Shown: positions 4,031 through 44,193, numbered from the stretch's first letter. The stretch is DNA of 64,000 nucleotides from Macrostomum lignano (GCA_002269645.1 NIVC01003940.1:4647-68646); one strand, 5' to 3'. A program made the numbers and translations. The notes: generated by a model not told the origin, from the sequence alone.

Positions 4031-4090
<60 letters not shown>

Positions 4091-4110
4091 CATCTATCTG
4101 TCTGTGTGTT
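3492..4110. repeat. (GT)n/(GAGT)n followed by a ~550-bp (CTGT)n microsatellite
   Basis: Read directly. Confidence 0.97.
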
Positions 4111-12741: not shown

Positions 12742-13496
12742 TCATTTTGTACAGAAAGAACTGTCCACAAGAGATATTTCCACCTTCCCATCAGGTTCAG
12801 TGTTGCCTCCATCCGTTCCTGAGACTTGCTCAGCTGAAGCATCCGCGTAACTGGAGCCGCCGCCGCCTGGACTGCCTTTCGCCCCTCCGGAGCCGCCGCA
12901 GTAGCCGCCACCGCCACCACCTCCGGCTTCATTTGCTCCAGATCCAGCAGTTCGGCCTCCTCCGCCTCCACCGCCGTAGCCACCGGAACCGCCACCGGCA
13001 CCGTCGCCTCCAGCCCAGGTGGTGCCTCCAAAGCCACTACTATCTCCAGCAGGTGAAGCCGCAGGCGACTGCCATCCAGCACCAGCAGCGCCACAGTTAG
13101 TACCCGACGGGTTGCTACCGGCGTTCTGATTGGCCGATCCGGGGCAAGAGCCATGCGAATGAATTCCAGCTTTGCCTGCAGTTGTCTCAGTGCCTCCGCC
13201 TCCTCCCCCGGCCGCCAACAGCAGGGTGCTGCTGCTCGTGTAGATGAAAGTTCCGCCTCCTCCACCGCCGCCATCGCCACTGCTTCCGCGTTTTCCAACA
13301 ACAATGGTCAGCGTCTGAGAACTAGTCAAGGTAAAGTGAGCAATTTTTTCTGCTCCGTTGCCACCAGCGGCTGCTGTGCTTCCATCAAAAGCTGTACCGC
13401 CTTTGGCACCACGCGCTACAAATCGATAGCAGCCACCGTCCACAGGTGGCGTGTAGGTCACCGACGTTCCTAATTGGTATGACGCTGATGCTGGCG
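12742..13496 (-). CDS. Paralog 1 exon 2: ALK/LTK-type glycine-rich domain (terminal exon)
   Basis: Phase-1 acceptor TTTTCAG at 13497; YTPP..GCY.F.A.GAKGG, GGNGA, LTIVVG, GGGGGGTF, LLLAAGGGGGG; stop at 12742. Confidence 0.8.
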
Positions 13497-14059
13497 CTGA
13501 AAACGTTAGAGAAAATCAGATTTTAACTTATAATGTTATCATTTAATAAATACCAACTTGAATTGTTAAACAGGCAGGTGCTTGTTTAAATTAGGTCAGT
13601 TTCGTTTCTGTGTAAAAATATCAATTCCTAGAGCACAGAGAATAAGAATGGTTACAGAGAATACCGAAGTATTCTCACTAACTAGAATTACTACGCTTGG
13701 TTACTTTTCCGGATTTTTTGCTTACACCAATCTCAGAATGCGAATACATCTGGTGGGTTGGCCCCCTAATAAAACAACAAGAGAAACTGCAGCTGCAGCA
13801 GCAATAACATCAGCAGCCACTGCCACAGAACTGCACTCCGCCAAAGCCAATAAAGACAGTCCAGCTGATAAAAAGTCAATTAAGGACATAACTCCATTAA
13901 AAATCAGCGAAATTTTAGAAACCAATTTTCTGTGGCCAAAATACTTGCTTTAAGATTATCCACTTTATTGTCTTTTAGCCAGAGAGAATTATGCCTTTAA
14001 CAGCCTGGCTTGGACTGTAGTCTGCGGGAGAGTGGCAGCTTAGAATTCCGAGCTGTCCG

Positions 14060-14330
14060 CTTGATTGGCTTTATTGTCTATGGCCGACTGCAGCTCTGTG
14101 ACAGTGGTTTGATTGGCTTTATTGTCTATGGCCGACTGCAGCTGTGTGACAGTGGTTTTGATTGGCTTTATTGTCTATGGCCGACTGCAGCTCTGTGACA
14201 GTGGTTTTGATTGGCTTTATTGTCTATGGCCGACTGCAGCTCTGTGACAGTGGTTTTGATTGGCTTTATTGTCTATTGCCGAGTGCAGGTCTGTGACAGT
14301 GGCTTTGATTGGCTTTATTGTCTATGGCCC
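14060..14330. repeat. ~49-bp minisatellite (~5.5 copies) in the paralog 1 intron
   Basis: TTGATTGGCTTTATTGTCTATGGCCGACTGCAGCTCTGTGACAGTGGTT. Confidence 0.9.
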
Positions 14331-14961
14331 AGTGAAGTTCTGTGGCGATCTCCTTCTGCTGTTGCGAATGGGGATTCCTATCTTGATTTGCTTAATTATG
14401 AACTTTACTGACAGAAGCAATTTACAGTTCAGTATGGCTTTTACCACTGAGCAATACGAGTATTAAGAAGCTTTTGTATCTAAATCCGAATGAAACTGAC
14501 TACCTAAACACGAGAGAGCATAGGAACTCGTGAAATTTAGTCTTGAAAATTTGATTAGAATCTGATGATAGCAAAAACTGCTTTTAAAAAGAGGCTTCGG
14601 GGCGAATGCATTCACAACTGAAGAAGTCGCAACAACTCGAGCTTCTTAGAATTGAGCTGATAAGAAAAATACATATTTGTCGGATTGCTAGTGCATTCAG
14701 TATGCTCTAAAAAAACGGCATTGTTAGTGCCGGATTTGTCTGTGTCGAAGCAATATTGAGCGCCATGCGTTCTCTCGAGCATGCTCAACGCGATACTACA
14801 AATATACATTACTTACGGGCCTCAAGCTTATTTCTAAGAAATTCGAGTTTAGGTTCCTACTACGAACGTACAGCAATCCAATTTGCAAATGGTGCAAAAG
14901 GAAGATTCTATTTTTCTTAGTATTTCACTTAAATGAAAAAAATGTATACATGTATACCTAC

Positions 14962-15832
14962 CAGTCAGTGCCAGTGGACCCGGAGTCGTATACGTTGTCG
15001 TTAGAGTCGTAGTAGTAGCAGTGGTAGTCGGAGTCGTAGTGGTCGTAGTCGTAGTGGTCGTTGGAGCCTCTGTGCTCGCAGTCGTAGTGGTAGTTGGAAC
15101 CTCTGTGGTCGTAGTCGTAGTGGTCGTTGGAGCCTCTGTGGTCACAATTGTAGTGGTCGTTGGAGCCTCTGTGGTCACAGTCGTAGTTGCCGTTGGAGCC
15201 TCTGTGGTCGTAGTCATAGTGGTCGTTGGAGCCTCTGTGGTCGTAGTTGTAGTGGTCGTTGGAGCCTCTGTGGTCGTAGTCGTAGTGGTCGTTGGAGCCT
15301 CTGTGGTCGCAGTCGTAGTGGTCGTTAGAGCCTCTGTGGTCGCAGTCGTAGTGGTCGTTGGAGCCTCTGTGGTCGCAGTCGTAGTGGTCGTTGGAGCCTC
15401 TGTGATCGTAGTCGTGGCTGTCGTTGGAGTCTCGGTGGTCGTTATCGGAGCCGAAGTAATCAGAGTCGAAGTGGTCGGAGCCGTAGTTCTCATCGAAGTA
15501 GTCTCACAATCTGCTCTGGTTCGCAGCACCTGCGTGTTGCAGGCCGGTCCGCTACTTTGCTGCCAGTAAAGCAGCAGGTCGCAGCTGTCTCCGAGAATGC
15601 ATGACCGGTTGCTAGGCAAGTACTCATAGACTGAGCACAGGGTCGTGTTGCTCGCGCATTCGACAGCGCACACTCGAGCATCGACAACCCCAAGCACTGT
15701 GCACTGACCGCTCGCTGCAGTCGCAGAATTGTAGCACAGGTCCGGCCTCTTGTCGAAGACAAAAGATAGGCCATCGGCGAATGAAATCAGGGCTGTCAAA
15801 GTTATGACAGCTTCGCCTACATGCAGTGACAT
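14962..15832 (-). CDS. Paralog 1 exon 1: signal peptide + PAN/apple-like domain + Thr-rich mucin stalk (11-aa units)
   Basis: Hydrophobic N-terminus; C..C.....C..YEY.....C pattern; ~12 TEAPTTTT units; phase-1 donor G|GTAGGT at 14961. Exons 1+2 = 1626 nt, i.e. 541 aa plus stop. Confidence 0.8.
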
Positions 15833-21881: not shown

Positions 21882-22681
21882 TCATTTGCAGTAAGAGTTG
21901 GCGACGGCTGCAATGACGACCTTTCCAGCAGGACCGCTATTGTGCCCGTTCGATCCCTCGGGGTTCCTGCCCGATGCGTCCACGAAGCTGCCGCCTCCGC
22001 CTCCTCCATCTCCGCTGCTGCTTCCAGTTCCGCCGCAACCACCGGAGTAGCCGCCGCCTCCGCCGCCGCCGCCTTCACTGTCACTACCGTCTGTGCCGCC
22101 GCCTCCGCCGCCTCCGCCGTAGCCACCATCGCCGTTGCTGTTTGCGCCGCCTCCCGCCCAGCTTCCGGTGGCGCTCTTTCCTCCATAGCCTCCATCGTCG
22201 CCTGTGGGTCCGGAACCTCCAGCAGAGCCCCAACCAGCGCCACTGCCGCCAGACCTGTCAGTGCCCTTGCTGGGACCTCCCTGTCCGACAGTCGAGCCAG
22301 AGCAAGTGCTGCTAGTGCCATCGTTGCCGTCTTTTCCCGTGTCCGAGTTGGAGCCATCACCGCCTCCGCCGCCTCCTCCGGCAGCCATAAGCAGCTGATG
22401 CGAGTTACTGCTTCTGGTTATATAGACAAAGGTTCCGCCTCCACCGCCGCCGCCGCCATTAGAGTCGCTATCGCTTCCGGCATCGGTCCCAGACTTTCCC
22501 ACGACAATCGTGAGCGTCTCGGTCAGATTGAAATAGGCCATTTTGTAAGCTCCTTTACCTCCAGTTGCACCTTTTGTTGACTGGCCACCGTTGGCGCCCC
22601 ATGTTTCGATTTTGTAGCAGGTGTTCACTTCCGGTGGTGTGAAGAATTGCACTAATCCCGTTTTGCCAGTTGTGCCACTCG
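21882..22681 (-). CDS. Paralog 2 distal glycine-rich-domain exon (terminal)
   Basis: Phase-1 acceptor ATTTCAG at 22682; FTPP...CYKIETWGANGG, GGKGA, LTIVVG, LLMAAGGGG; stop at 21882; near-identical to 26717-27544. Confidence 0.8.
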
Positions 22682-23553
22682 CTGAAATGCGGTTGATAGA
22701 GTGTGCGTTCAGTGGTAATTCGATTGTAAAGACACAGAACTGCATGATGTTTTGAATGCAGCTATCAGTATTATCAGACATATATCGCAGCCAAGTTATG
22801 GCCAAGAAGTCAGAAGTAAGAGACCTGCCGTCGCCCAGATTCAAAGGGTGTAGTGCTTGTGTTGACATGCTGTGGCGTTTACGGGGATAGTCATACTATT
22901 GTTAATTCTGGCAAAATATTGTTCTACCGGATGAAATAGATTAACTTAATAAAATATCTGTGTATGTAAATTTAAATGTGGCTTTTGTTAGAGTTTTATA
23001 AGTTTCTTGAGTGCTTGCAACCAAGAGTTTGTGGCGTCTGTGATTCCTGAAGTTTGATTGCAGATCGAATCCTACCTCGCAAAAGTGGAAGGCTTATACC
23101 GTATAGCTTCGCTTTTCAATATCTGAGGCAATTAATTTTTTTAAGAATAAAAATACGAATTTTTGACTCGCAGTCGCTGCTCTGCTGTTAACGCCGAGGT
23201 ACTGTACACTCAGTCTACTTGTATAAAGCACTTGGATTCACTTTGGTATGAGTATGCCAAGCCAGAAAACTTTGACACACGACAGAGTTCTCAAATTTTG
23301 TATACATTCAACCAGTTTATGCCTCTTCATTTAAGCATGAGTATGTCATTATGCTGTCTGTCGCCAAGAGTAGAATTTTAGGTGTAAAATTTGTACCCCT
23401 CTACAAAGTAATAACGGCATGCTATGAACTTGTGACGCTTAATGAAATGCGCGTAGTAGGCTGTTTCCACAAAGTATCAACTACGTAAATGGCAAAGTGT
23501 CTAACGATTGTAGAGGAATCTAAATAGATTCAGTAAGTAAATGACATGAAGTA

Positions 23554-23700
23554 AGGCTTTGAAAAGCTATTGATATATACCTCAGCAAGTGCAGACTAGC
23601 ATGCAGTCAGGCTTTGACAAGCTATTTTGATATATACCTCAGCAAGCGCAGAATAGCATGCAGCCAGGCTTTGACAAGCTATTGATGTTTACCTCAGCAA
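23554..23700. repeat. ~55-bp repeat, ~3 copies, with a partial fourth copy at 26573-26606
   Basis: AGCATGCAGTCAGGCTTTGACAAGCTATTGATATATACCTCAGCAAG. Confidence 0.8.
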
Positions 23701-26577
23701 TCGCCGTTCTTCACCTAAGTCGTAACCTAGATCTTCGAGGGAACAATCGAGGCACTGTACGAGTTGAGCGACGAGTTGCAACGAAACAACAGCGACGCAG
23801 CACAGCACTCTCGGCTGCTCGATGAAATAGAAACCGTCGAGGAGGACTACCGCGTCAGCATGCGAGAGGTCCAGCGTTTCCGGCTCGCACCCGAGACCTC
23901 AGAAGGTCCGAGGCAGGTCCAGTCACAACAACAGCAGCAACAGCCACACTTGGAAATCGGTGGCTATGGTGAGTTTGGCGACGAGTTTTCTCCGAACGAT
24001 GCCAGTAGACCCGAGGCAGAACAAGCTAGCTTAGCGGAGGAACTGCTGGCAGTCAAGGTGCGAGTTCTACGGAACACGAACTGTCAAAAGAACTTTGGAA
24101 GATGTTGCGTCGAGTTGAAATTCCTACCTTCTACGGAGAAAAACAACAGTACGAGGCGTGGAAGGCAGCGTTTATGGCTTGCATCGATAGGGCCCGAGCC
24201 ACACCAGAGTTCAAACTGCGCAGTTGCGTCAGTATTTGCGTGGATCGGCGCTGAAGGTGATAGAGCACTTGGATCATTCGGCTGCTGCCGACCAGGCGGC
24301 TAAGGAGAGATTGAAGCGTGAGTACGGCGGCAAGCGACGAAAGTTGGCGCACTACTTGGAGGAGCTAGATAGTTTTCCACCCGTGAAGCAGAATAGTGCC
24401 GAGGAGCTGAAGAAATTCGCAAACATCCTCGATGTGGCTGTAATTAATTTGGAAGAAGCTGGTAAGAACTCCGAACTTAGTGATGGACTGCTTCATGCTA
24501 GATTGCAAAAAAAGTTACCAGAGCCGATGGTCGCAGCATTTCGTCGATGGATCTTCGAGAAGGCAAAAGCAGAAGGCGTTAGGACCCTTCGAGAGTGGGT
24601 TTTGCGTGAGGCAGAGTTCCGAACTGAGGCAGCAGAAATTGTGTACGGGGTGGCCGCATCAAGTCAGGAGCAACCAAGTAAGGACAGCAAGCAGAAAGCT
24701 TTCCATGTAGCGCAGCTAAGCAAGAGCACAAGCAAGGGGAGCTACTCCTGTGTCGTCTGCAAGGAGGCACACGATCTATGGAAGTGTCCCGCGTTCGGGA
24801 AGCTGTCGGCTGAGAACAGATGGAAGGCTGCTCAGGAAGTCAAAGCCTGTTTCCGCTGTCTTGGCCATGGTCACATCGGTATAAACTGCCGGCGAGGTGG
24901 AAAGTGCGGCGTTGATGGTTGCAGAAAATCCCACCATCGTCTGCTGCATTCGACAACAAGGTCGGAATCGAAAGAGAAGCCAGAAGGCAAAGCCGGCGCT
25001 GAGCAAGAAATGCAGTCGAAGCCGAAAGCTGCAACCGTGACAATGGTAGCTAGAGAAGCCAGTGCGGTTTCACTTCGAACGCTTCCGGTCATTCTTAAGG
25101 CGAGTAGGCGAGCTGTGAAGATCAATGCCTTACTTGATGACGCCAGCACAAAGACCTATTTGAATACGGCGATAGCATCCAAGCTGCTGGAGGCCTGCAC
25201 GGCAAACAGGAATCAATGCAGGTAAACGTGTTGAACGGACAGGTGGAAACCTTCATAACAGCACCAGTGTCATGCACCTTGGAGAGTACTGACGGCCAAA
25301 TAAGCAAGGAGATTACTGTGCTGACGGTAGATAGAGTGACCGGGAGCATGGAAGTAGTAGATTTGCAAAAATTGGCGTCGAAATGGTCGCACTTAGGAAA
25401 CATTCCGTTTCCAAGAAGGCAAACATCAGCGGAGGTTGACTTGCTGATCGGAGCTGATCACACCGACTTGCATGCGTCGCATCTGGAAGTGTGTGGCAAG
25501 CCTGGAGATCCGCAAGCCCGTCTAACACCTTTAGGTTGGACCTGCATTGGCAAGGTTGATGGAGCTTCGGAACGCTCTTTATTTGCGAGCACATTCTTCA
25601 GCGGAGGCGAATTCGAGAACTTGGCCCCATTGTTGCGCCAATGCTGAGAAGTTGAAGAGCTTCAGCGGGTGGAGTCACCTTCATTCACGAATTCAGAGCA
25701 GCTTGCCCTGGAACGCACTCGATCATCGCTGAAGTTCATTGACGGGCAATACCAGGTTGGGTTTCCATGGGAACCGGATGCCAAGCTACAAGCCAACAAC
25801 TTCGAGATGGCCATTAAGCGGCTTGGAAACACTGAGAAGCGGCTCCTCAAGGATCTGGAAATAGCCAAAAAGTACCAGGACGTCATCAATCGCTGCGAGA
25901 AAATAGGCCACGTCAGAAGGGTGCTGCAGAATGAGCATCAGGCTATGAAAAGGTACTACCTTCCGCATTTCCCAGTGGTTCGAATGGGCATGGCAACGCG
26001 TGCAGTTCATTTAAAAATGGCGTATGGCCTTGATACAAGCAGCTTCCTAAACTCGTTGTTTCGCATGATCAGTCGCCGAGGTCAAGTTCTGGAAATCTTC
26101 TCAGACAATGGAACTGATTTTGTTGGTGCAGATAGAGAACTAAAGGAGCTGTGCAAGTCGATGGACAAGAACGCATTGCAGTCACGCACATCTTACGTAC
26201 CGATCAAGTGGCACTTTAATCCGCCTGCGGCTCCGCACTTCGGCGGTGTGCATGAGTCAATGATAAAGTCAACAAAGAGAGCGATAAATGCGATCTTGAG
26301 AACGGCAGAAGTCAGCGATGAACAGCTTGTAACAGCATTTGCCGGAGCAGAGCCGCTGCTGAACTCGCGACCTTTGACATACCAGTCGTCCCATCCTGGC
26401 GACGATCCGGTCCTGACGCCAGCGCACTTCCTGTACGGGCATGTCGGCGGACAGCTGGCACCAGAGACCGCGGCTGACGAGGTGTTCAACCCAACCAAGA
26501 GGTGGCGCTACGTGCAGCAGCTGGTGCAGTCCTTTTGGCGGCGATGGCTCCGAGAGTGGCTGCCAGCTAGTGAATAG
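23701..26577 (+). mobile_element. BEL/Pao LTR retrotransposon, internally deleted (gag, zinc knuckles, protease, integrase core; RT and RNase H absent)
   Basis: CxxC...H..C knuckles (CVVCKEAHDLWKC, CFRCLGHGH...C, CGVDGCRKSHHRLLH), LLDDAS protease, DLLIGAD, YLPHFPV, then TRAVHL, SDNGT.F, APHFGG..E, LNSRPL, LTPAHFL. Confidence 0.93.
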
Positions 26578-26716
26578 CATGCAGTCAGGCTCTGACCTCA
26601 GCAAGCAAACATCTCGATCAAAATACCAAGTGCACTTCCGCTCTTTCATGTCAGACCTGACAAAGTGATTTGCCTTTTGAGGGAACGAAAATTTAAAATA
26701 GCTATATATTACTTAC

Positions 26717-27544
26717 AGGTAAATGTCACCGGAATAGAGGCGTTGATTTCACAATAGGAACTGGCGACGGCTGCAATGACGACCTTTCCAGCAGGACCGC
26801 TGTTGTGCCCATTCGATCCCTCGGGGTTCCTGCCCGATGCGTCCACAAAGCTGCCGCCTCCGCCTCCTTCATCTCCGCTGCTGCTTCCAGTTCCGCCGCA
26901 ACCACCGGAGTAGCCGCCGCCTCCGCCGCCGCCGCCTTCACTGTCACTACCGTCTGTGCCGCCGCCTCCGCCGCCTCCGCCGTAGCCACCATCGCCTTTG
27001 CTGTTTGCGCCGCCTCCCGCCCAGCTTCCGGTGGCGCTCTTTCCTCCATAGCCTCCATCGTCGCCTGTGGGTCCGGAACCTCCAGCAGAGCCCCAACCAG
27101 CGCCACTGCCGCCAGACCTGTCAGTGCCCTTGCTGGGACCTCCCTGTCCGACAATCGAGCCAGAGCAAGTGCTGCTAGTGCCATCGCTGCCGTCTTTTCC
27201 CGTGTCCGAGCTGGAGCCATCACCGCCTCCGCCGCCTCCTCCGGCAGCCATAAGCAGCTGATGCGAGTTACTGCTTCTGGTTATATAGACAAAGGTTCCG
27301 CCTCCACCGCCGCCGCCGCCATTAGAGTCGCTATCGCTTCCGGCATCGGTCCCAGACTTTCCCACGACAATCGTGAGCGTCTCAATCAGATTGAAATAGG
27401 CCATTTTGTAAGCTCCTTTGCCTCCAGTTGCACCTTTTGTTGACTGGCCACCGTTGGCGCCCCATGTTTCGATTTTGTAGCAGGTGTTCACTTCCGGTGG
27501 TGTGAAGAATTGCACTAATCCCGTTTTGCCAGTTGTGCCACTCG
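26717..27544 (-). CDS. Paralog 2 proximal glycine-rich-domain exon (internal phase 1-1, or terminal if read to the stop at 26709)
   Basis: Acceptor at 27545; GTAAGT donor at 26716-26711; same motifs as the other GRD exons. Confidence 0.8.
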
Positions 27545-27744
27545 CTGAAATGCGGTTGATAGAATGTGCGTTCAGTGGTAATTCGATTGTAAAGACACAG
27601 AACTGCATGATGTTTTGAATGCAGCTATCAGTATTATCAGACATATATCGCAGCCAAGTTATGGCCAAGAAGTCAAAACTAAGAGACCTGCCGTCGCCCA
27701 GATTCAAAGGGTGCTTGTGTTGACGCTACTTTGTAGCTATCGAC

Positions 27745-28910: not shown

Positions 28911-30525
28911 CATTAAAGATGACCGACGACAGAGCCGTCGTTTTTGTAGTCGTAGTGGTCATATTTTGAGTCGTGGTGGGGGTAGTCCAATTTGAAGCTG
29001 TAGTAGTCGAAGCCCCTGTGGTCGTAGGCGGAGCCTCTGTTGTCGTAGTCGAAGCCCCTGTGGTCGTAGTCGGAGCCTCTGTTGTCGTAGTCGAAGCCCC
29101 TGTGGTCGTAGTCGGAGCCCCTGTGGTCGTAGTCGGAGCCCCTGTGGTCGTAGTCGGAGCCCCTGTGGTCGTAGTCGGAGCCTCTGTGGTCGTAGTCGGA
29201 GCCTCTGTGGTCGTAGTCGGAGCCCCTGTGGTCGTAGTCGGAGCCTCTGTGGTCGTAGTCGGAGCCCCTGTGGTCGCAGTCGGAGCCCCTGTGGTCGTAG
29301 TCGGAGCCCCTGTGGTCGTAGTCGGAGCCTCTGTGGTCGTAGTCGGAGCCCCTGTGGTCGTAGTCGGAGCCCCTGTGGTCGTAGTCGGAGCCCCTGTGGT
29401 CGTAGTCGGAGCCTCTGTTGTCGTAGTCGAAGCCTCTGTGGTCGTAGTCGGAGCCCCTGTGGTCGTAGTCGGAGCCTCTGTGGTCGTAGTCGGAGCCCCT
29501 GTGGTCGTAGTCGGAGCCCCTGTGGTCGTAGTCGGAGCCTCTGTTGTCGTAGTCGAAGCCTCTGTGGTCGTAGTCGGAGCCCCTGTGGTCGTAGTCGGAG
29601 CCCCTGTGGTCGTAGTCGGAGCCTCTGTGGTCGTAGTCGGAGCCCCTGTGGTCGTAGTCGGAGCCTCTGTGGTCGTAGTCGGAGCCTCTGTTGTCGTAGT
29701 CGAAGCCTCTGTGGTCGTAGTCGGAGCCCCTGTGGTCGTAGTCGGAGCCCCTGTGGTTGTAGTCGGAGCCTTTGTGGTCGTAGTCGGAGCCTCTGTTGTC
29801 GTAGTCGAAGCCCCTGTGGTCGTAGTCGGAGCCTCTGTTGTCGTAGTCGAAGCCTCTGTGGTCGTAGTCGGAGCCCCTGTGGTCGTAGTCGGAGCCTCTG
29901 TTGTCGTAGTCGAAGCCTCTGTGGTCGTAGTCGGAGCCCCTGTGGTCGTAGTCGGAGCCCCTGTGGTTGTAGTCGGAGCCTTTGTGGTCGTAGTCGGAGC
30001 CTCTGTTGTCGTAGTCGAAGCCCCTGTGGTCGTAGTCGGAGCCCCTGTGGTCGTAGTCGGAGCCTCTGTGGTCGTAGTCGGAGCCCCTGTGGTCGTAGTC
30101 GGAGCCCCTGTGGTCGTAGTCGGAGCCTCGGTGGTCGTATTCGAAGTCGCAATCGGAGTCATGGTGTTCGGAGCCGGAGTTGTCATCGAAGTAGACTCAC
30201 AATCTGCTCTGGTTCGCAGCAGCTGCGTGTTGCAGACCGGCCCGCTACTGAGCTGCCAGTAAAGCAGCAGGTCGCAGCTTTCTCCGAAAATGCATGACCG
30301 GCTGCTGGGCAAGTACTCATAGACTGAGCACAGGGTCGTGTTGCTCGCGCATTCGACAGCGCACACTCGAGCATCGGCAACACCGAGCACTGTGCGCTGA
30401 CCGCTCGCAGCAGTCACAGCATTGTAGCACAGGTCCGGCCTCTTGTCGAAGACAAAGGTAACCGTTGCTGTAAGTGAAATTAGAACTGCCAATATAATGG
30501 CAGTTCTGAAAAGACATGTAGACAT
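28911..30525 (-). CDS. Paralog 2 exon 1: signal peptide + PAN/apple-like domain + long mucin stalk (~54 x 7-aa (E/G)A(P/S)TTTT units)
   Basis: ORF 28807-30525; phase-1 donor G|GTAGGC at 28910; 21-bp tandem repeat at ~28990-30130. Confidence 0.82.
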
Positions 30526-33195: not shown

Positions 33196-33274
33196 CCGTT
33201 CCGGTCGGCTATGGTAAGCAGAGCTTGCCATAGAATTGAAGTTAGGAAAATCAGATTGAGCAGCTCTTCAAAAC

Positions 33275-33333
<59 letters not shown>

Positions 33334-35620
33334 TCAGCCATTAGGGGTCATGGACAAATATTTATTCAAAAAGGAACTAGCTTTACTTTTATCCTTCCAA
33401 ATAAAAAATTTGTCATTTGCCTTTTATACCGCAGTTGGTTGAAATCTGCTACAGATTATTCACGGTCTGGAAACAACTCGACTGAAGAAAAAAACATACG
33501 AAAAATATTTTAACAAAGTAAAACAAAAGTAAGCAGATCATACAGATCGTACATTTAGATGCAAAAGTACTCCAAAACGCAAAAAAGAACATTGTGATAT
33601 GTGTTAGACAACTTTAAACTTTAAATAAACATAATAACTCAGTAAACTTACAAACTACATTAAAATATACTGACTTGCATTATATTTTGACTAAGTTCGA
33701 GTGAACAGTTGCCTTCAAATAGATTCATTAAGGCAGACTTAGTCCAAATCGCAGTCGAAGATCAGGCATGCCACTGCTGAAAGCAGGCTTCCAAGCAGAG
33801 CCCCGGTTCCCCTGGACACTCAGGGCAGCAGTAGATCGTGCGCTTGCTGCTGTCAGCTCTGTAGCAGACACGACAGCGCTTTGTTGGTCTTGGCTGACTG
33901 TCCCGCGCCACAATCTTCGTTGGAAAGTGCGGACTGACTGGGCCACCTGGAGCGGCCTGGATGCCAGCGGCCGGGCGCTTCCTGCTCGTTCCGGTACGCT
34001 CCACCAGCTCCCGAATGCTGGCCTCAAGAAACTTGGCGAACGTCTTCTCTCCACCGCACCGGCTGTACACAATCCAAGCGTTGCGAATCATTTGAAGAAA
34101 AAGATGCAAGCCGAGCTTCAAAAACCACTTTGTAGTTTTCCTCCCTGGCAGATGAGGCTGTAGATGACAGTCCATTCTGTCAACACCACCCATGCACCGA
34201 TTGTAGGTGAGAACTGACCTGCTCTTCTGCACCACTGTTTCTGCTCCTCCACGAACCACGCGTCTGGTTTGAACCCTCTCAGCCGCCTCTTTCGTGTCCA
34301 GCAAATATAGAGTCTTCAGGCCACTCTCCTTACGTTCAACGATCTTGACAGCCAGCACCCCGTCTTTGCGCATGAAGGCGACGTCGTTAGGTGGAACGTG
34401 CAGCTGTCTGAGCTCAATCGGCACACCTCGGTCGGCCCGGACGGTACAAGTCAGGTGCGTTCCTTGAGTCAGCAGGTACTCTGACAGCCGATAGGAACCG
34501 AACCATTAATCGACAAAGATGCGGTAGCCTTGGTGCAACAAGTTGTAGCAGAGCTCAACAACAATCTTCTCGCTGAAGGACAGATTGTCTCCCTGCAACT
34601 GTTCATCGAACCGGCGGTTCTCCTCTGGGGTCGAGTGAACGCGGAAGTTGTACAGGTAGCCTGATTTGGCCTCACATGCACAATATAGCTTTATTCCGTA
34701 CTTAGCCCGCTTCGTTGGAATATATTGCTTAAAGCGCAGGCGACCTTTGTACAGCACCAAAGACTCATCCACGCTCACATCCTCCTCGGGCCTGTACACA
34801 TTAATACAAGCCTCTTTCAAAGCCTGCAGCAACGGACGGATCTTAAAGAGAGGATCGTTGACAATCGGATACTCAGCGCAATCGTAGAAACGGAGCAGAC
34901 CAAGTAGCTGCTTGAAGCGGTCCCTAGAGAGAGCTTGAGGTGCTTGAAAGTACGGCGTACTGTAGTAACTGCCTGTGCTCCAGTACTCGTTCATTTTGGC
35001 CTTTTTATTGGAACCCATGTAAAGGCACATTCCTAACACTTTCTTTACTTCATTCGCACTGCAATCTCTCCATTGCGCAAAACTCCGAGGCAGGTCGTCG
35101 ACATTGACAGAGTGGATCGCCGCCCAGGCTCTTCGATTAGTCCATTTTGCCAGTTCTTCGAAAAAGCTATTGGACAAAAAAAAACCGAGAAAAAAGGACG
35201 TTGCCTGCTCAACATCACCAGGTACGCAAATTCCTGGATTCAGTCCAGGTGTCCCTAGAAACTCGTGCACATTCGCTTGCACGTCATGCCCAGCAACTAC
35301 AGAATGCCAAGACAGCTCTTCCGTCTCTTCGGCAGTGCTCTGGCCGTCCGACTCACCATAATCGTCCTCTGACATGATGTCTTCTTCTTCATCGGACGTC
35401 ATTAAGTCCGAATCGGAAAAACTTTAAAATTTTTCCATGAGTGCAGCCATAATCTTCAGCTGTAAAATTTTCTATGTTAGTTTGTGGAGACTTAGTTTTG
35501 GGCCTTATTCATAACTAGTCAATGTCTTTTTATCAGACTGGAATGACCACAGACTTAGCAAACCATTCTGCTGAAAGGAATAGTCTATGGTAAGCGCTGC
35601 TTACCATCCGACCGGAACGG
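33196..35620 (-). mobile_element. piggyBac-family DNA transposon with ~36-38 bp imperfect TIRs
   Basis: Left CCGTTCCGGTCGGCTATGGTAAGCAGAGCTTGCCATAG (33196-33233) matches the reverse complement of 35585-35620 with a 2-bp indel and 2 mismatches; encloses the transposase; no TTAA flanks seen. Confidence 0.8.
33762..35402 (-). pseudogene. piggyBac (PGBD4-like) transposase, 547 codons with one in-frame stop at 34506-34508
   Basis: SVDESLV, FKQYIPTKRAKYGIK, FVD*WF, YNRCMGGVDRMD and a C-terminal Cys-rich domain CRVC...CPEC....LC...CF..WH; the two ORFs are in the same frame. Confidence 0.92.
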
Positions 35621-36851: not shown

Positions 36852-39800
36852 TTAATTAGTCAGCTTGTCAATGAGCTGCCGCAGCACGATGTTGCGCGTC
36901 CTGCCGCTCGAAGCTCGCACCTTGACGCCCTCTGCAATCTGCGCATGACTCAGAGCCACGTAGAGCTGGCCATGTTGATAGCAGGCCATCGCCAGGCCAA
37001 CGGCGTAGGTGCTCAGCGTCTGGCCTTTGCTATGGTGGATGGTCATGGCGAAACACAATCGGATCGGTAACTGCAGGCGGCGGAAGGTGAAGGGCAGCTC
37101 GGTTGGACCCGGTTCCTGTTGGATCCGCGGGATGAGAACCTGCCGCCCGTGGTAGCTGACGCCCGTGGCGACCTCCGAAAGCAGTACGTTGTCCCGCAGT
37201 TCGCGAAGCAGCAGCCGGGTCTCGTGGCACATCAGCGGAGGGTCCAGATTCATCGTCATCATGACCGGCATGCCGACCTTCAGCTCTAGCCGGTGATGTG
37301 GCAGGCCGTTGGGGTCCAGCCGGTTCAGCAGCTCCGGTAGGGAAGTTGCTCGCTGCCCCATCGTCGTGCGGAAATCGAGTCGACCGACAGGTAGACCCGA
37401 CTCTCACCGGGAAGCAGCGCCAAGCAGGTGACGTTGGCTTCGTCCAGGGTCTTGTTGAGCGGTCTTGTCTTGCTCCGCGAACATCTGGTTGGTTCAAACG
37501 ATGGTTAGACGTGCCGGATGAGCTACTAGTTTTGTCCTCAGGCTTGAAAATAGCTAAATTCAACATTCAGCGTTCAAGCTCAAGTTTTTCGATAGATCTT
37601 GGTTAATTCTAAAATAAGGTTGTAGTGTGCGTACGCACGGTATCTTAGCCCAAAGTGTACGCCCGGGCGGTCTGATTGGCTGCAGAGCGGGGTGGGTGCC
37701 GCCACCCCAAAAATTCTAGCTCTAAATATATAGATGTGTGCCCAGTGCGGCGAGAGTGTAAGAGTTTCGGCTACACCGCAAACACGGCCTCTGTCTCAGT
37801 TACTACAAAGGTTAAAGGAAATTCACCTGATCTGGCTCAACACGTGGCTCAGGCAGTCCGTAGGCAAGCAGCTCAGTTCCTCCCATGGTGTCCAGCAGTG
37901 TCTGCAGCTCTCGCTAAACCTCCAACTCGGCAGCCTCTGGGCTATAGCCTTAGTCTAGCAGATCAACTCGCCGGAGAACTTCTGCCACAGCTTTGCAGGG
38001 TCGCTGGGGCCGCCTGCATGGCGACACAAAATGGCAGCGAAAAGGCGGCACAGAGCCGCTGGCAATCGCGTCTCCGTGGCTTCGCACAGGCAAAGTCACC
38101 ATGGTGCCTGTCGTCTTCCAGCAGTCCACGAGTCTGGCAGGCGGCGGCAGTCCTCTGAAGGTCGGCAGCAGGACGCCATCAACGGTGCGCAACGCCTCGA
38201 ATGACGTCGGGCCTCGAACATTCACCAGCAGCAGGCGCAGGCAGAAACTGTCTCCCGTCCGAGGGCTAACTGTGTAGACGCGGCCGTTGTTGCCAGTCGT
38301 CAGCACGCCAGCTGGCTGATCGGCAGTCTCTCGGCTGTGCCTCGCGCGATGCCACTGGTGCGCCCTGTTGTCTCAGGTGAAGTTCCGGGGTACCTCCTGG
38401 TACAGCAGGTCTCGCGCAACTGCATCCTGGTCGTCCTTCAGGCTGATGAAGGGCCAGCCTGATGACAGCCGGATACCGACTGTTCATGTGCACTTAAAAG
38501 CCCAAGATGGTGCTGACCACCTCCATGGGACTAAAGTACCCGCCCAGAAGGTGCTGCCTGACTTGCGCTTCGCTGGCGCCGCCTTGGTCTGAGCTGACTG
38601 ATGGGGCTGCTGATCGCCACTTTCCTGAAGAGCCGCCGCGTCGCTAGCCGTAGTAGCATGGCTGTCGGCCTTCGCATCAGCAGCAGCAGCTAGCTCCTTC
38701 CGGACTTGGAATGTCGCTGCCCTTAAATATAAGGGTACCGACGTAGTTTAATGCCTTGACTGTCGCGCAGATCTAGACGTTCAGGTGAGACCTAAACTCG
38801 TGCAGAAGCACAGGGCAGTAAGCACCACCTAGCGCGGTTGTCAAAGGTGAAATTTGCCTTCTGACCGCCGCGCAGCTTTGCGACCTTGGCCACCGAGAAG
38901 CCGCTTATCTAAGTTAATATGCGATGATAGTGCGGGTAGCCGTCCTCTTGAATCATGGTGACCGCCTAGAACTCTCTCGGATAGCGCTTGCTACATGCGC
39001 CATTCTCCATGCACTACGCGTCTGGATTCAGCTGCATTACACAGGGACCATGTGTTGTATTTTCTGCTTCCGTCCGTGCGGACCGCAGACGGGTGATCAG
39101 GGGTTTGGGTACTGGACTGCCCAGAGCTTGCCGGCTGGGATAGGCGAGAGAGTGGCGACCCCCGAGGCGTACGGACACTTCGAGGTGGAGGTGGAGAGGC
39201 TGGGAGCGTACAGACACTCGGCCAGCCCCACGGAGAGAGGGAGACGCAGATGAGGAGGCTGTGAGCAGGTAGCCACTCAGCAGCAACAGCAGAGGTGAGC
39301 ACGGGTCTGGAGGCGTACAGACACTTCGCAGACCCGAAGGAAGACGGTGGCGAGAGAGGTGAATAATGAAGGCGGGACAAATTAACGAAAGCGAACGCTG
39401 TCTTACCGGGCGGGGTCACTTGTCGCGCTCATGCAGGCGTGGCCTCTAATATCTCAGCCTCAGTTGACTGTATTTCAATTTCAAGCTTCACTTTCACTCA
39501 AACACGTGTAGAGCTAGAGTTGTAGAGAGAGAGAGCAGGGAGGGCGAGAGCCGGGCGAGGGCCGCGCGCGCACATAAATACTGGGTGAGCACTGAGCAGG
39601 GGACTGGGGAGGGCTTAGCCACGCAGGGCTGGGGGGTGGGGGCAAAACTCACAGAGTTGAAGGGCGAGAGGGAAGGCTAGCCAATCAGGTGCCTCCACGG
39701 CGAGACACATGATTGGACTAGCCCACGCGAGAGAGAGAGATGAAAATACGCCAGCCAATGAAAATGTGGGCTGATGAAAGTGAGAACAAAAAACGAATAG

Positions 39801-40680
39801 CAGCTTTAGACGGAGGGGGCAAACCAGAAAAAACCAGTGGCAGGGAGAGGAGGGGCGGAGAGCGCAGAGGTCGGGGCAAGGGCATTGCGAGGCGCAGCTC
39901 ACAACACCGACCAGCTTGTGCGTCGGCAACGGGATCCGGGAGTTCTGCACTGATGATGGCGACATACTGACCCGGCTTCAGCTTAACAGTCAACCAAAGC
40001 AGTGCGTGCACGTGGGGAAGACCTACTTGGAGTGGGATTGGAAAATGAAAGTTTCGATCTAACCAGATGATCAGCAAATACATATATAATGATTCTGTTC
40101 CTATGAATAACTTTTTAAACCATTTTATTAGTACATAATAAAGTAGGCAATCAATAATGGCATGATAGTAGTTACTTCGCTTCTGGCACTCGAGAGCGCA
40201 GACTCGAGCCAGCGTGTCGCCAAACAGAATCTTCAGCCTGTCGAGGAAGGTCTTCTTTGGCTCGAACACCCAGTCGGTGATACCCGGCCGGCTGATCCAC
40301 GGCAGTTTGGCCAGCAGCAGCTCAGAAAGGATCTCAGGCCATTTCGGGTTACACTTCATTGTCAGGAACAGGTCTGGGCGGCCGAAGGCGTGCACATACG
40401 CCATGGCATCCTGCTGACGTTCTAGACGGTACCGAGGGTCACCGACGTTAGCTAGACGTCAGGATGACCTGGTTCCCGATGTCGATCCCCCTGGGGTCGA
40501 TCTCGCTCGGGTGTCCGTCATTCGCGTGGAGGGTGTCTCGCAATTTGTGCAAGCGCTTTGACAGAAGTTCCTTCCGGTGCAGCCAGATGTAGTTAAGCCT
40601 CTCCAACTCAATCTTGGCAGTAATCCTGAGCACATCAAGCGCCAATACTGTACGCAGGCACGCACTCGTACAACGCTCAC
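36852..40680 (-). mobile_element. Degenerate Helitron (Rep/PIF1 helicase), fragmented by indels, an interruption at ~38600-39900 and loss of the helicase core
   Basis: KIELERL, DAMAYV..FGRPDLFLT.KCNPKWPEI, ECQKR|.LPHVH, ISAELPDP, PAVIRLALH, GRVYTVSP..G..F.LRLLL..VRGPTSF..LRTV, LPHHRLELKVGMPVM, FRRLQLPIRLCFAMTI..SKGQTL. Confidence 0.92.
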
Positions 40681-42034: not shown

Positions 42035-42326
42035 ACCTGCCCTAATGGTCAAATGTGCAACTGAGAGACAGCTCAGCCGCAGCTATTGCGCGGCGCATCT
42101 GATGGCTGCGTACGTCTGTTCAGTCCAAGGACTGGGGGGTCGCCACACACACCCTCAATTACCCCAGCTAATGCTGGCACCCATTTTACAGCTGGTTGAA
42201 CTGAAGCAATGCAGAGTTAAGTGTCTTGCTCAAGGACACAATTTGTCCTAAGTGGATCGAGAATCGAACCCCCGACCTTTTAATCACGAGTCCGACTCTC
42301 TGACCACAATAGGCTATACAACTCCC
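42035..42326 (-). mobile_element. tRNA-derived CORE-type SINE (degenerate counterpart at ~21560-21720)
   Basis: A-box TAGCCTATTGTGG, B-box GGTTCGATTC, then TGTGTCCTTGAGCAAGACACTTAAC...CTGTAAAATGGG, similar to the MIR/CORE consensus. Confidence 0.75.
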
Positions 42327-42590
42327 TGTTACCGACCTCCAGCTCATTTCTGAGATAATCGGCGCCAAAAAGTGTTTAGCCAATGATAACCACTACAAGT
42401 AATGGCCTTGAGCCTGCCAATTTAGTGCTACAATGAGATATTTAACATTCTTCCAATGCAATATCCCTCGAAAACTATGGGTTTTGATTGGATTTTGGTT
42501 CGATGCTTTAGTAGGCTGTTCGATTTCACAATGCTTCCTTATCTTAGAGCAATTTACTCATTGATATCCAGCGTTTAACTCCTTAACTTC

Positions 42591-43051
42591 TTAGTTGCAG
42601 TTGGCACGAGCGACGGCTGCAATGACGACCTTTCCAGCAGGACCGCTGTTGTGCCCGTTCGATCCCTCGGGGTTCCTGCCCGATGCGTCCACGTAGCTGC
42701 CGCCTCCGCCTCCTCCATTGCCGCTGCTGCTTCCAGTTCCGCCGCAACCACCGGAGTAGCCGCCGCCTCCGCCGCCGCCGCCTTCACTGTCACTACCGTC
42801 TGTGCCGCCGCCTCCGCCGCCTCCGCCGTAGCCACCATCGCCGTTGCTGTTTGCGCCGCCTCCCGCCCAGCTTCCGGTGGCACTCTTTCCTCCATAGCCT
42901 CCATCGTCGCCTGTGGGTCCGGAACCTCCAGCAGAGCCCCAACCAGCGCCACTGCCGCCAGACCTGTCAGTGCCCTTGCTGGGACCTCCCTGTCCGACAG
43001 TCGAGCCAGAGCAAGTGCTGCTAGTGCCAGCGTTGCCGTCTTGGGTTTGGG
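42591..43051 (-). CDS. Paralog 3 exon 2: C-terminal half only of the glycine-rich domain (possibly a pseudogene)
   Basis: Near-identical to the paralog 2 GRD from 43040 down to ~42600; candidate phase-1 acceptor GATCAG at 43052; stop at 42591. Confidence 0.55.
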
Positions 43052-43766
43052 CTGATCCCAGAGAATTCCTGTGGTACAAAACAGATCTATTGAAGCTTTT
43101 AAGCGTCTAAGAAACTCATAAGCATGTACCCGGTATGCAGGCTCTGATCGATCCTATACAACTCATGATGACCCATCAATAAGCACGTGTGGACTTGAAA
43201 CTTATATACATATGTTAGCAATAATATGTAAGAATCGTCTCCTAGAAAGAGTGCAAAGGTGACAGAGAAAAACATAATTAACAAGTCTTATATATTACTT
43301 TAAGAAATAGCTCCCAAATCAGAGAGAAAAATGACAAAGACCAACTGCCAGTAGTCAATACTGCACTTAGGCCAATATGCGAATGTAGAATTTGAAAAAT
43401 GTTGCATCATCATGATCGGTTCTTTCTTTAACTCCCTGGTCCCTGATTCATATATGCGCCGGCATTTCGACAGATGAAATTCCTCTAGGGAGAGACTATA
43501 CGCTCGTACTATTCCATAGGTAGAAGAGGATATGATGTACAATATTATTATACATGTACAGCCAGTAAGGCATAAATGATGTACTTCGTTTCACTTATGC
43601 TTTTATCAGCTTTGACTCCACTAAGAGAGAAAAAGTAGTGGCGTAAATAATTGTGTGCATATAAATTTTATACAGGCCGATTGCTTGAAAAATATATATT
43701 AAGATTTCTCAACGCCTATTGTATAGCATTAATTATACAAACAGAAACATTAAAAATTCCGCCTAC

Positions 43767-44193
43767 CACTAAAGACGACCATCGGCGTTGCAGTCGTTGA
43801 GGTCGTAGTCGAAGTCGTAATCGGAGTCGTAGTGGTCGGAGCCGCAGGTCTCATCGAAGTAGTCTCACAATCTGCTCTGGTTCGCAGCACCTGCGTGTTG
43901 CAGACCGGCCCGGTGCTGAGCTGCCAGTAAAGCAGCAGGTTGCAGCTGTCTCCGAGAATGCATGACCGGTTGCTATGCAAGTACTCATAGACTGAGCACA
44001 GGGTCGTGTTGCTCGCGCATTCGACAGCGCACACTCGAGCATCGGCGACCCCGAGCACTGTGCGCTGACCGCTCGCATCAGTCGCAGCATTGTAGCACAG
44101 GTCCGGCCTCTTGTCGAAGACAAAAGTCAGTGGAGATGTAAGTGAAACCAGAACTGCCAATATAATGGCAATTCTGAGAATACTTGTAGACAT
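43767..44193 (-). CDS. Paralog 3 exon 1: signal peptide + PAN/apple-like domain + very short Thr stalk
   Basis: ORF 43750-44193, highly similar to paralogs 1 and 2; phase-1 donor G|GTAGGC at 43766. Confidence 0.78.

What the first reader, a model, noticed from the sequence alone, without database searches (positions are those of the whole stretch)
12742..44193. Tandem family of secreted PAN - mucin stalk - ALK/LTK glycine-rich-domain proteins with no membrane anchor or kinase
Seen: three minus-strand paralogs (ATG at 15832, 30525, 44193). In each, exon 1 (signal peptide + Cys-rich PAN/apple-like module + Thr-rich stalk) ends in a phase-1 GTAGG donor, and every complete Gly-rich exon begins at a phase-1 acceptor (CAG|CG); the joins are in frame (541 aa; 804-1080 aa; ~295 aa). 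The six-frame track does not show this link. Established: the GA.GG / VG..G / GGGG.F / L.AAGGGG signature is the ALK/LTK TNF-like plus polyglycine-II ligand-binding module, normally part of a receptor tyrosine kinase; PAN domains bind proteins or glycans; TEAP/T-rich tracts form O-glycosylated rods. Inference: a dumbbell-shaped bivalent secreted protein, such as a ligand trap or presenter for ALK-type ligands or a mucus/adhesive cross-linker. I do not recognise this architecture from characterised proteins.
Basis: partly seen in the sequence, partly recalled or inferred. Interest (0 to 1): 0.8.

Follow-up and report, generated by a model that had tools for sequence, protein, structure and literature searches.

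The report
Flatworm secreted PAN–mucin–glycine-rich-domain gene cluster
This is a tandem cluster of flatworm (Macrostomum) genes for secreted proteins that join a PAN/apple module, a threonine-rich mucin stalk and a stand-alone copy of the ALK/LTK glycine-rich domain. The PAN–glycine-rich core already sits in databases as an uncharacterised, expanded gene family, so this is a new variant, not a new kind of protein.

Summary
On the minus strand there are three signal-peptide + PAN exons (ATG at 15832, 30525, 44193). Each ends in a phase-1 G|GTAGG donor. There are four glycine-rich-domain (GRD) exons, and the three complete ones start at a phase-1 CAG|CG acceptor. In-frame joins give 541 aa (g1), 816 or 804 aa (g2) and 295 aa (g3).

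A profile of this domain family, with its bacterial and metagenomic relatives, matches the ALK/LTK ligand-binding domain (E 2e-34). So does an AlphaFold model (TM about 0.7). The N-terminal module folds as a PAN/apple domain. No transmembrane segment or kinase exon follows.

Annotated Macrostomum lignano paralogues (Mlig028980, Mlig019850 and others) have the same signal peptide–PAN–phase-1 intron–GRD–stop layout but no stalk. A coral protein combines PAN, fn2 and GRD. The architecture is therefore a mucin-stalk variant of an existing, uncharacterised family.

g3 lacks the N-terminal half of its GRD here and looks degraded. g2 carries a duplicated GRD exon separated by a retroelement.

The most likely role is a secreted, O-glycosylated matrix, mucus or adhesive protein that can bind at both ends. 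Nothing supports an ALK-ligand trap. No transcript or expression data could be reached.

The parts
14962..15832 (-). g1 exon 1. Signal peptide (about aa 1-23), PAN/apple module (aa 24-114, window 15491-15763) and Thr-rich stalk (aa 115-290; 33-nt repeat x12.2 at 15039-15442). Ends in the phase-1 donor ACTG|GTAGGT.
13497..14961 (-). g1 intron (1465 nt), containing a 49-nt x5.8 tandem repeat at 14061-14344.
12742..13496 (-). g1 exon 2. Complete GRD (251 aa) plus TGA stop, with the phase-1 acceptor TTTTCAG|CG. It is only 45% identical to the g2 GRD.
28911..30525 (-). g2 exon 1. Signal peptide, PAN (30184-30456) and a 424-aa Thr-rich stalk (21-nt repeat x54.3 at 29003-30143). Ends in the phase-1 donor AATG|GTAGGC.
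26709..27544 (-). g2 proximal GRD exon (g2a), giving the 816-aa product. Homology to g2b ends 15 nt before g2b's stop. It has a neo-C-terminus EINASIPVTFTCK and no poly(A) signal within 400 nt.
23764..26577 (+). Truncated LTR-retroelement-like gag / protease / integrase ORFs lying between the two g2 GRD exon copies. An insertion, not part of the gene product.
21882..22681 (-). g2 distal GRD exon (g2b), giving the 804-aa product. It is 98.5% identical in nucleotides to g2a over 952 nt, including 170 nt of upstream intron. It keeps the family-type C-terminus ...NSYCK*, and AATAAA lies at 21752-21747.
43767..44193 (-). g3 exon 1. Signal peptide, PAN (passes the Pfam PAN_1 threshold) and only about 28 aa of Thr-rich linker. 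Donor AGTG|GTAGGC. Window 43846-43781 read in the +1 frame encodes the first 22 aa of UniProt A0A1I8J935.
42591..43051 (-). g3 GRD remnant. It holds only the C-terminal about 150 aa of the domain (homology starts at 43042-43043). The only in-frame acceptor nearby is a weak cryptic CAG at 43051. Probably a degraded copy in this assembly.

Best explanation
The region is a tandem cluster of Macrostomum genes, from M. lignano or a very close relative. They belong to a lineage-expanded family of small secreted proteins built as signal peptide + PAN/apple module | phase-1 intron | free-standing ALK/LTK-type glycine-rich (TNF-like + polyglycine-II) domain | stop. In this subfamily, exon 1 has gained a Thr/Pro/Ala/Glu tandem-repeat (mucin/PTS) spacer of 176 aa (g1) or 424 aa (g2) between PAN and the intron.

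g1 and g2 look intact. g2 has a duplicated terminal GRD exon separated by a retroelement. g3 has lost the first half of its GRD and is probably decaying.

Shown: exon structure, phase compatibility, domain homology and fold, absence of a transmembrane segment or kinase, family membership, and purifying selection on the GRD.

Inferred: the product is secreted and heavily O-glycosylated, forming an extended rod with one binding module at each end. It would act as a structural, cross-linking or adhesive component of an extracellular secretion (epidermal or gland mucus, apical matrix, or a reproductive or adhesive secretion). PAN would hold one partner (glycan or protein) and the rigid GRD another. 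It is not a signalling receptor.
For: - Gene models: three phase-1 GTAGG donors and phase-1 CAG|CG acceptors give uninterrupted ORFs of 541 and 804/816 aa.
- Paralogue structure: P0002 (BOX15_Mlig028980g1) and P0121 (BOX15_Mlig019850) are annotated SP-PAN-GRD proteins. Each has a phase-1 intron at the same domain boundary, and P0002 even uses CAG|CG. They share the same C-terminal Cys-then-stop ending.
- Closest paralogue: P0137 has a PAN 43% identical to g2's, followed directly by a GRD.
- GRD: family profile against PDB gives ALK/LTK at E 2e-34 and C. elegans SCD-2 at 3.5e-19, with no other hits. The AF2 model has pLDDT 90 and pTM 0.91. All Foldseek hits with E<=0.001 are ALK/LTK/SCD-2; the ALK/LTK hits have TMq 0.62-0.72.
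- PAN: Pfam PAN_1 scores 23.1 bits (above threshold) for g3 and 19.3 for g2. The PAN part of the profile hits a 15x PAN_1 protein. Foldseek's top hits for the AF2 model are almost all PAN/apple modules (HGF N domain, plasminogen, leech antiplatelet protein, factor XI A4, apicomplexan lectins), TMq 0.6-0.68.
- Stalk: 55-62% Thr and 9-12% Pro, from 33-nt x12 and 21-nt x54 in-frame repeats.
- Secretion: an N-terminal hydrophobic segment is the only Kyte-Doolittle peak above 1.6, so there is no transmembrane segment.
- Selection: GRD dN/dS is about 0.3 for both the old (g1/g2) and the young (g2a/g2b) pairs.
- Domain context: GRD homologues elsewhere are mostly free-standing extracellular or surface proteins of bacteria, some carrying PEP-CTERM or type-IX sorting tags, FN3 or PKD domains. 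This fits a general extracellular binding or structural module.
Against: - No transcript, EST, proteomic or in situ evidence could be reached, so the junctions rest on phase, paralogue structure and one mis-framed database model.
- Neither spliced protein looked up (g1, g3) nor any close relative of exon 1 is in the protein collection.
- The individual window sequences fall below Pfam's gathering score for PF12810 (best 20.7 against 24.5).
- The locus is rich in transposable elements. g2 is interrupted, and g2a lacks an obvious poly(A) signal.
- PAN dN/dS of 0.6-0.7 could mean relaxed constraint.
- The function is pure inference: O-glycosylation, binding partners and tissue are all unknown.
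Confidence: 0.6

Rival explanations
1. Soluble decoy or presenter for ALK-type ligands. The free GRD would bind the worm's ALK ligand (Jeb/HEN-1/ALKAL-like) and modulate receptor signalling, with PAN and the stalk tethering it to the matrix.
For: The GRD is a true structural homologue of the ligand-binding TG domain of ALK/LTK. Soluble receptor ectodomains acting as decoys are a common theme (general knowledge).
Against: - The window GRDs are far closer to free-standing bacterial and metagenomic GRD proteins (E 1e-15 to 1e-12) than to ALK/LTK (E 2e-4 to 5e-3).
- The family is expanded to many fast-diverging copies (g1 and g2 GRDs are 45% identical), which is unlike a dedicated decoy.
- From a by-eye alignment and remembered ALK contact residues (unverified), the acidic ALK residue E978 corresponds to Lys in both g1 and g2.
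- No ALK or ALK ligand of this species was examined.
Confidence: 0.05
2. Non-functional relics. The PAN-stalk and GRD ORFs are decaying duplicates in a repeat-rich, polyploid genome, and are not joined or expressed as proposed.
For: - g3 lacks half its GRD, and g3 dN/dS is about 0.7.
- g2 is interrupted by a retroelement and a duplicated exon.
- piggyBac and Helitron fragments lie between the genes.
- No matching predicted protein exists for exon 1, and the spliced g1 and g3 products are absent.
Against: - ORFs of 541 and 804/816 aa stay open through 0.5-1.3 kb of repeats.
- GRD dN/dS is about 0.3, including for the young g2a/g2b pair.
- Donor and acceptor motifs and phase are conserved among the copies and with annotated paralogues.
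- g2b has AATAAA 129 nt after its stop.
Confidence: 0.12
3. Secreted recognition or defence factor. PAN (a lectin-like module) and GRD (an adhesin-like module) would bind microbial surfaces, agglutinating or trapping microbes in mucus.
For: - Structural neighbours of the PAN model include galactose-binding apicomplexan PAN lectins.
- The next-best Foldseek hit of the GRD after ALK/LTK is a mycobacteriophage tail-tip protein (E 0.08, weak).
- A polyglycine-II domain serves as the host-binding adhesin of phage S16 (cited in PMC13243192).
- Tandem duplication, variable stalk length and PAN dN/dS of 0.6-0.7 fit externally acting, fast-evolving proteins.
Against: There is no direct evidence of any kind. 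The same features fit mucus, adhesive or reproductive secretions equally well. This reading overlaps the main explanation and differs from it only in the target.
Confidence: 0.15

Closest known systems
Macrostomum lignano 'Apple domain-containing' / 'receptor protein-tyrosine kinase' predicted proteins: BOX15_Mlig028980g1 (P0002), BOX15_Mlig019850g1/g2 (P0121), A0A1I8IMG2 (P0137), and the A0A1I8GL89 and A0A1I8JKJ3 clusters
   Same: Signal peptide, PAN with the same conserved Cys pattern (30-43% identity), a phase-1 intron at the PAN|GRD boundary, a single-exon GRD, and a stop 1-2 residues after a C-terminal Cys. No transmembrane segment or kinase.
   Different: None of them has the Thr-rich tandem-repeat stalk. 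All are uncharacterised and named only by automatic rules. The window's exon 1 has no close match among them.
ALK / LTK receptor tyrosine kinases (TG supradomain: TNF-like + glycine-rich; PDB 7N00, 7NX0, 7LS0) and C. elegans SCD-2 (7LIR)
   Same: Homologous domain by profile (E 2e-34) and by fold (TMq about 0.7). The YxIxAxGAxGG, VGQxG, GGGGGxF, LxAAGGGG and GGGGGYSGG motifs are shared.
   Different: No MAM, LDLa or EGF-like modules, no transmembrane helix and no kinase. The domain sits in one exon and is shorter than in ALK. Single-sequence similarity is weak (E about 1e-4). Ligand binding was not tested.
Free-standing GRD proteins of bacteria, metagenomes and cnidarians (PF12810 / PF21722), e.g. 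the Oculina patagonica protein P0049 (PAN_1 + fn2 + GRD)
   Same: The GRD is the C-terminal module of a secreted or surface protein of 250-450 aa. The coral protein also pairs it with a PAN domain.
   Different: The partner domains differ (fn2, FN3, PKD, sorting tags). None has a mucin stalk. Some bacterial proteins carry 5-7 GRDs in proteins of 2000-3000 aa.
C. elegans LET-653 (PAN-PAN-mucin-like linker-ZP apical matrix glycoprotein; PMC4970718)
   Same: A secreted protein with N-terminal PAN module(s), an O-glycosylated mucin-like linker and a different C-terminal matrix-binding domain. PAN and the C-terminal domain bind different matrix partners.
   Different: Its C-terminal domain is ZP, not GRD, and it has two PAN domains. 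There is no homology beyond PAN. This is an analogy of design, not family membership.

Membership tests
ALK/LTK glycine-rich (TG) domain, Pfam PF12810 | Score above Pfam's gathering threshold (24.5 bits) for the individual sequence | tested here: not met
   Best window GRD scores 20.7 bits (E 4.4e-4); the others score 14.4 and 10.7. PF21722 scores 12.3-16.9 against a threshold of 24.3.
ALK/LTK glycine-rich (TG) domain, Pfam PF12810 | Full-length profile homology to solved ALK/LTK ligand-binding domains | tested here: met
   A 41-sequence profile that includes both window GRDs matches ALK at E 2.3e-34 (profile positions 9-282 of 305), LTK at 6e-34 and SCD-2 at 3.5e-19. No other PDB hits.
ALK/LTK glycine-rich (TG) domain, Pfam PF12810 | TNF-like beta-sandwich packed against a polyglycine-II lattice (fold) | tested here: met
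   AF2 model has pLDDT 90.2 and pTM 0.91. Foldseek's top 21 hits are all ALK/LTK/SCD-2; ALK/LTK have TMq 0.62-0.72 and SCD-2 0.49; best E 6e-11.
ALK/LTK receptor tyrosine kinases | Transmembrane helix and intracellular tyrosine kinase domain after the GRD/EGF-like region | tested here: not met
   Every GRD exon ends in a stop at the family's conserved C-terminus. No hydrophobic 19-mer scores above 1.6 outside the signal peptide. The only kinase-like exons in the window are Aurora-type, on the + strand.
ALK/LTK receptor tyrosine kinases | Binding of ALKAL / Jeb / HEN-1 type ligands | not testable with these tools
   No ligand sequences or binding assays were available.
PAN/apple domain (PF00024) | Pfam gathering threshold (21.4 bits) | tested here: inconclusive
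   g3 scores 23.1 bits (passes), g2 scores 19.3 (E 1e-3) and g1 has no hit. The three are 76-84% identical.
PAN/apple domain (PF00024) | PAN fold with conserved disulfide cysteines | tested here: met
   AF2 model has pLDDT 73. Foldseek's top hits are almost all PAN/apple modules, TMq 0.6-0.68, probability about 1.0, but E is only about 1e-2. Six Cys align between the window genes and P0002, and four are invariant across all nine aligned family members. The profile hits a 15x PAN_1 protein.
Mucin-type PTS domain | Long tandem repeats dominated by Thr/Ser/Pro | tested here: met
   g1: 176 aa, 62% T, 9% P, 33-nt x12.2. g2: 424 aa, 55% T, 12% P, 21-nt x54.3.
Mucin-type PTS domain | Dense O-glycosylation | not testable with these tools
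   Needs biochemistry.
Macrostomum secreted PAN-GRD family | SP + PAN | phase-1 intron | single-exon GRD | stop just after the C-terminal Cys | tested here: met
LET-653-type PAN-mucin-ZP proteins | C-terminal ZP domain | tested here: not met
   Pfam finds no ZP domain; the C-terminal module is a GRD.

The most novel reading that the evidence does not exclude
The ALK/LTK 'TG' ligand-binding module would be an ancient free-standing extracellular binding domain, not a receptor-specific invention. Macrostomum would have expanded it into a family of soluble two-headed PAN-(mucin)-GRD proteins. These would either form a previously unrecognised class of mucus or adhesive cross-linkers based on a polyglycine-II surface, or act as soluble modulators of ALK-type signalling.
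Probability: 0.12. Interest if true: 0.6.

Novelty: new variant of a known kind. Interest (0 to 1): 0.4.

Why it matters
In the literature I could reach, the ALK/LTK glycine-rich domain is discussed only as part of the receptor. No paper I found treats it as a free-standing module. This locus, with its paralogues, shows that the same fold circulates as a free secreted module in a flatworm, paired with PAN and here with a mucin stalk. Its closest relatives are bacterial surface proteins.

If expression is confirmed, the family offers a tractable system for asking what a polyglycine-II/TNF-like domain binds when it is not attached to a kinase. M. lignano has RNAi, in situ hybridisation and transgenesis. 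The family could also belong to the worm's mucus, adhesive or reproductive secretions.

There is a practical point too. These genes appear unannotated or mis-annotated: one database model reads the stalk in the wrong frame and is named 'receptor protein-tyrosine kinase'.

Tried and rejected
- Exact look-up of the spliced g1 and g3 proteins: absent from the collection.
- Word-indexed homology search with the PAN exon alone: no hit at E<=0.01.
- The exhaustive profile search was meant to be PAN-only, but the profile covered all of P0002, so GRD hits dominated. It still recovered the M. lignano paralogues.
- Look-up of the contig encoding P0001: not on record.
- Species check with the neighbouring Aurora-kinase exon: no M. 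lignano hit. The best match was 67% to a cestode, so species identity rests on the 22-aa exact match to A0A1I8J935 and on the paralogues.
- Literature searches for Macrostomum with glycine-rich, apple/PAN or ALK, for Mlig028980 and for PF12810 found nothing on this family.
- The ALK structure papers were not held.
- A search to verify the ALK ligand-contact residues failed, so that argument is marked as from memory.
- Rejected: continuation into transmembrane or kinase exons.
- Rejected: a 1080-aa g2 with two GRDs, because there is a stop in the first GRD exon.
- Rejected: horizontal transfer of the GRD as a necessary explanation. The genes have spliceosomal introns and a metazoan partner domain, and metazoan ALK carries the same fold.

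Full report
**What is there**

The window is metazoan DNA rich in transposons and satellites. Its best protein matches are to the free-living flatworm Macrostomum lignano.

On the minus strand, the ORF listing and an internal tblastn find exactly three related first exons, with ATG at 15832, 30525 and 44193 (76-84% aa identity). They also find four glycine-rich-domain (GRD) exons: 13496-12742, 27544-26709, 22681-21882, and a fragment at 43043-42594 that covers only the last 150 residues of the domain.

Each first exon encodes three parts:
- a hydrophobic N-terminal signal-like segment;
- a 91-aa module with eight Cys;
- a Thr-rich tract. In g1 this is 176 aa, 62% Thr, built from a 33-nt repeat x12.2. 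In g2 it is 424 aa, 55% Thr, from a 21-nt repeat x54.3. In g3 it is only about 28 aa.

**Splice logic**

The three first exons end in ACTG|GTAGGT, AATG|GTAGGC and AGTG|GTAGGC, all phase 1. The three complete GRD exons begin at TTTTCAG|CG or ATTTCAG|CG, also phase 1.

The joins give open reading frames of these sizes:
- g1: 541 aa.
- g2: 816 aa with the proximal GRD exon, 804 aa with the distal one.
- g3: 295 aa, through a weak cryptic acceptor at 43051.

The '1080 aa' upper bound for g2 would need read-through of a stop codon.

**Independent support for the junction**

Three lines of evidence back the join.

- BOX15_Mlig028980g1 (P0002, 373 aa, assembly GCA_002269645.1) is an annotated M. lignano protein with signal peptide, PAN and GRD, and no stalk. 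Its PAN-to-GRD intron is phase 1, with donor TAT T|GTGAGC and acceptor AATGCAG|CG. That is the same position, phase and even dinucleotide as here.
- BOX15_Mlig019850 (P0121, 403 aa) has two exons split by a phase-1 intron at the same boundary.
- The first 22 residues of UniProt A0A1I8J935 (P0001, named 'receptor protein-tyrosine kinase') are encoded exactly by window 43846-43781. This is the g3 stalk read in the +1 frame from a donor 15 nt upstream of GTAGGC. The model then continues 'ASGTTGKTG...' into a GRD.

So an existing gene model already joins g3-type exon-1 sequence to a GRD exon at the CAG|CG acceptor. It uses a frame that loses the start codon, signal peptide and PAN. The frame proposed here is the only one continuous with the ATG-signal peptide-PAN ORF.

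**Domain identities**

*GRD.* Taken singly, the GRDs are below Pfam's threshold for PF12810 (best 20.7 against 24.5 bits), and they hit ALK/LTK chains only weakly (E 2e-4 to 5e-3). A 41-sequence profile of the family does much better. It matches human ALK and LTK ligand-binding domains at E about 2e-34 over the full length and C. elegans SCD-2 at 3.5e-19, with nothing else in the PDB. An AlphaFold2 model of the g2 GRD is confident (pLDDT 90.2, pTM 0.91). All 21 of its Foldseek hits with E<=0.001 are ALK/LTK/SCD-2, with TMq 0.62-0.72 for ALK/LTK and 0.49 for SCD-2.

*PAN.* The N-terminal module passes Pfam PAN_1 for g3 and narrowly misses for g2. The family profile hits a 15x PAN_1 protein. A moderate-confidence model (pLDDT 73) retrieves almost only PAN/apple modules at TMq 0.6-0.68: HGF N domain, plasminogen, leech antiplatelet protein, factor XI A4 and apicomplexan lectins.

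*No anchor or kinase.* The only hydrophobic window above 1.6 is the signal segment. The only kinase-like exons in the window are Aurora-type, on the opposite strand. The proteins end '...C(K/TK)*', as the paralogues end '...CA*' and '...CTG*'.

**Family context**

An exhaustive profile search shows that signal peptide-PAN-GRD is an expanded family in M. lignano. Members include P0002, P0121, P0137 (the closest, with PAN 43% identical), two clusters of 9 and 7 near-identical entries, and chimeric long models. UniRef names them all 'Apple domain-containing protein' or 'receptor protein-tyrosine kinase', and none has a stalk.

A coral protein (Oculina patagonica) combines PAN_1, fn2 and GRD.

Most other GRD relatives are free-standing proteins of 250-450 aa from bacteria and metagenomes, some with surface-sorting tags. 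There are also giant bacterial proteins with 5-7 GRDs. The window GRDs are much closer to these (E 1e-15) than to ALK/LTK.

I found no paper on the family.

**Evolution of the cluster**

g2a and g2b are 98.5% identical over 952 nt, including 170 nt of intron. Their homology ends 15 nt before g2b's stop. A truncated retroelement (gag-protease-integrase, + strand, 23764-26577) lies between them.

g2b keeps the family-type C-terminus, an AATAAA 129 nt downstream of the stop, and a 3' flank shared with g3. g2a has a 12-residue neo-C-terminus and no obvious poly(A) signal.

GRD dN/dS is about 0.3 both for g2a/g2b (dS 0.05) and for g1/g2b (dS about 1.5, saturated). The PAN exons of g1 and g2 differ by a dS of only 0.25, with dN/dS of 0.6-0.7. 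The first exons are therefore much younger than the GRDs they precede. That points to gene conversion or exon shuffling of the PAN-stalk exon.

g3 lacks the strands that form the TNF-like half of the domain, and its GRD dN/dS is about 0.7. In this assembly it is probably decaying. The locus behind A0A1I8J935 does carry that half, so a haplotype or assembly difference is possible.

**Function**

Sequence shows a secreted protein with a PAN module, a mucin-type spacer of variable length and a rigid GRD.

My best inference is an O-glycosylated, two-headed component of an extracellular secretion or apical matrix. By design it resembles C. elegans LET-653 (PAN-mucin-ZP), where PAN and the C-terminal domain bind different matrix partners (PMC4970718).

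The alternatives compare as follows:
- An ALK-ligand decoy is not supported.
- A microbe-binding role is possible.
- Non-expression remains a real alternative until transcripts are checked.

**Verdict**

The architecture is a mucin-stalk variant of a PAN-GRD family that is already in databases but uncharacterised. It is not a new kind of protein. Interest is moderate.

Noticed in passing
window 43781-43846 (-) and UniProt A0A1I8J935 (P0001): A public M. lignano gene model named 'receptor protein-tyrosine kinase' reads the g3 Thr-rich stalk in the +1 frame (CGSDHYDSDYDFDYDLNDCNAD) and joins it to a GRD. It is a mis-framed fragment of a PAN-stalk-GRD gene. It carries the GRD N-terminal half that g3 lacks in this window.
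   Followed up: yes
window 15491-15832 / 30184-30525 versus 12745-13494 / 21885-22679: The exons have discordant ages. The PAN exons of g1 and g2 differ by dS 0.25, but their GRD exons differ by dS about 1.5. This suggests gene conversion or shuffling of the first exon.
   Followed up: partly
window 21899-22850 and 26762-27713, with 22851-26761 between: A 952-nt direct duplication (98.5% identity) of the GRD exon plus 170 nt of intron flanks a truncated LTR-retroelement-like gag/protease/integrase segment. The origin is unresolved (tandem duplication or repair-associated duplication).
   Followed up: partly
window 33762-35402 (-): piggyBac-type transposase (DDE_Tnp_1_7, E 1e-48) split into two ORFs. 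Probably a decayed element between g2 and g3.
   Followed up: partly
window 36852-37566 (-) and 39718-40404 (-): Pif1-type helicase fragment (Pif1_2B domain), which I read as Helitron-like, with a further unscanned ORF that looked related by eye. These are further transposon debris between g2 and g3.
   Followed up: partly
window 49866-54153 (+): Exons of an aldehyde dehydrogenase gene (Aldedh, E 4e-22). Its introns hold a 24-nt satellite (50527-51209), a 26-nt array (52343-52897) and a (TCTG)n array (53280-53827). The (TCTG)n array recurs at 3566-4109, and a short (CTGT)n run lies at 33274-33331.
   Followed up: partly
window 57220-59796 (+): Aurora-type Ser/Thr kinase exons (Pkinase, E 1e-30; best relatives are flatworm Aurora kinases at about 67%). 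A 35/140-nt satellite (57738-58765) starts directly at the end of the first exon. The gene is unrelated to the GRD genes and lies on the opposite strand.
   Followed up: partly
window 6228-9113: A large 23-nt satellite with higher-order periods of 182 and 478 nt, in two blocks. An RNase H-containing retroelement fragment (7160-7789, minus strand) separates them.
   Followed up: no
window 132-713 (+): Fragment of an organellar/viral-type DNA polymerase B (DNA_pol_B_2, E 1e-12), as found in Polinton/Maverick-like elements.
   Followed up: no
L002 (GCA_018402085.1, JAGYJM010000002.1): A bacterial-type contig encodes giant proteins (2975 aa and 1658 aa; a neighbouring 1471-aa protein has IgGFc_binding + GRD). 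They carry up to six GRD repeats, showing that the ALK-type GRD is used as a repeated surface module in bacteria.
   Followed up: partly
window 56283-57082: A 13-nt repeat x63 (CTTCCCCTCTTCT) produces long spurious ORFs on both strands (SLPLF... and EEGKRRG...) just upstream of the Aurora gene. Probably non-coding.
   Followed up: no
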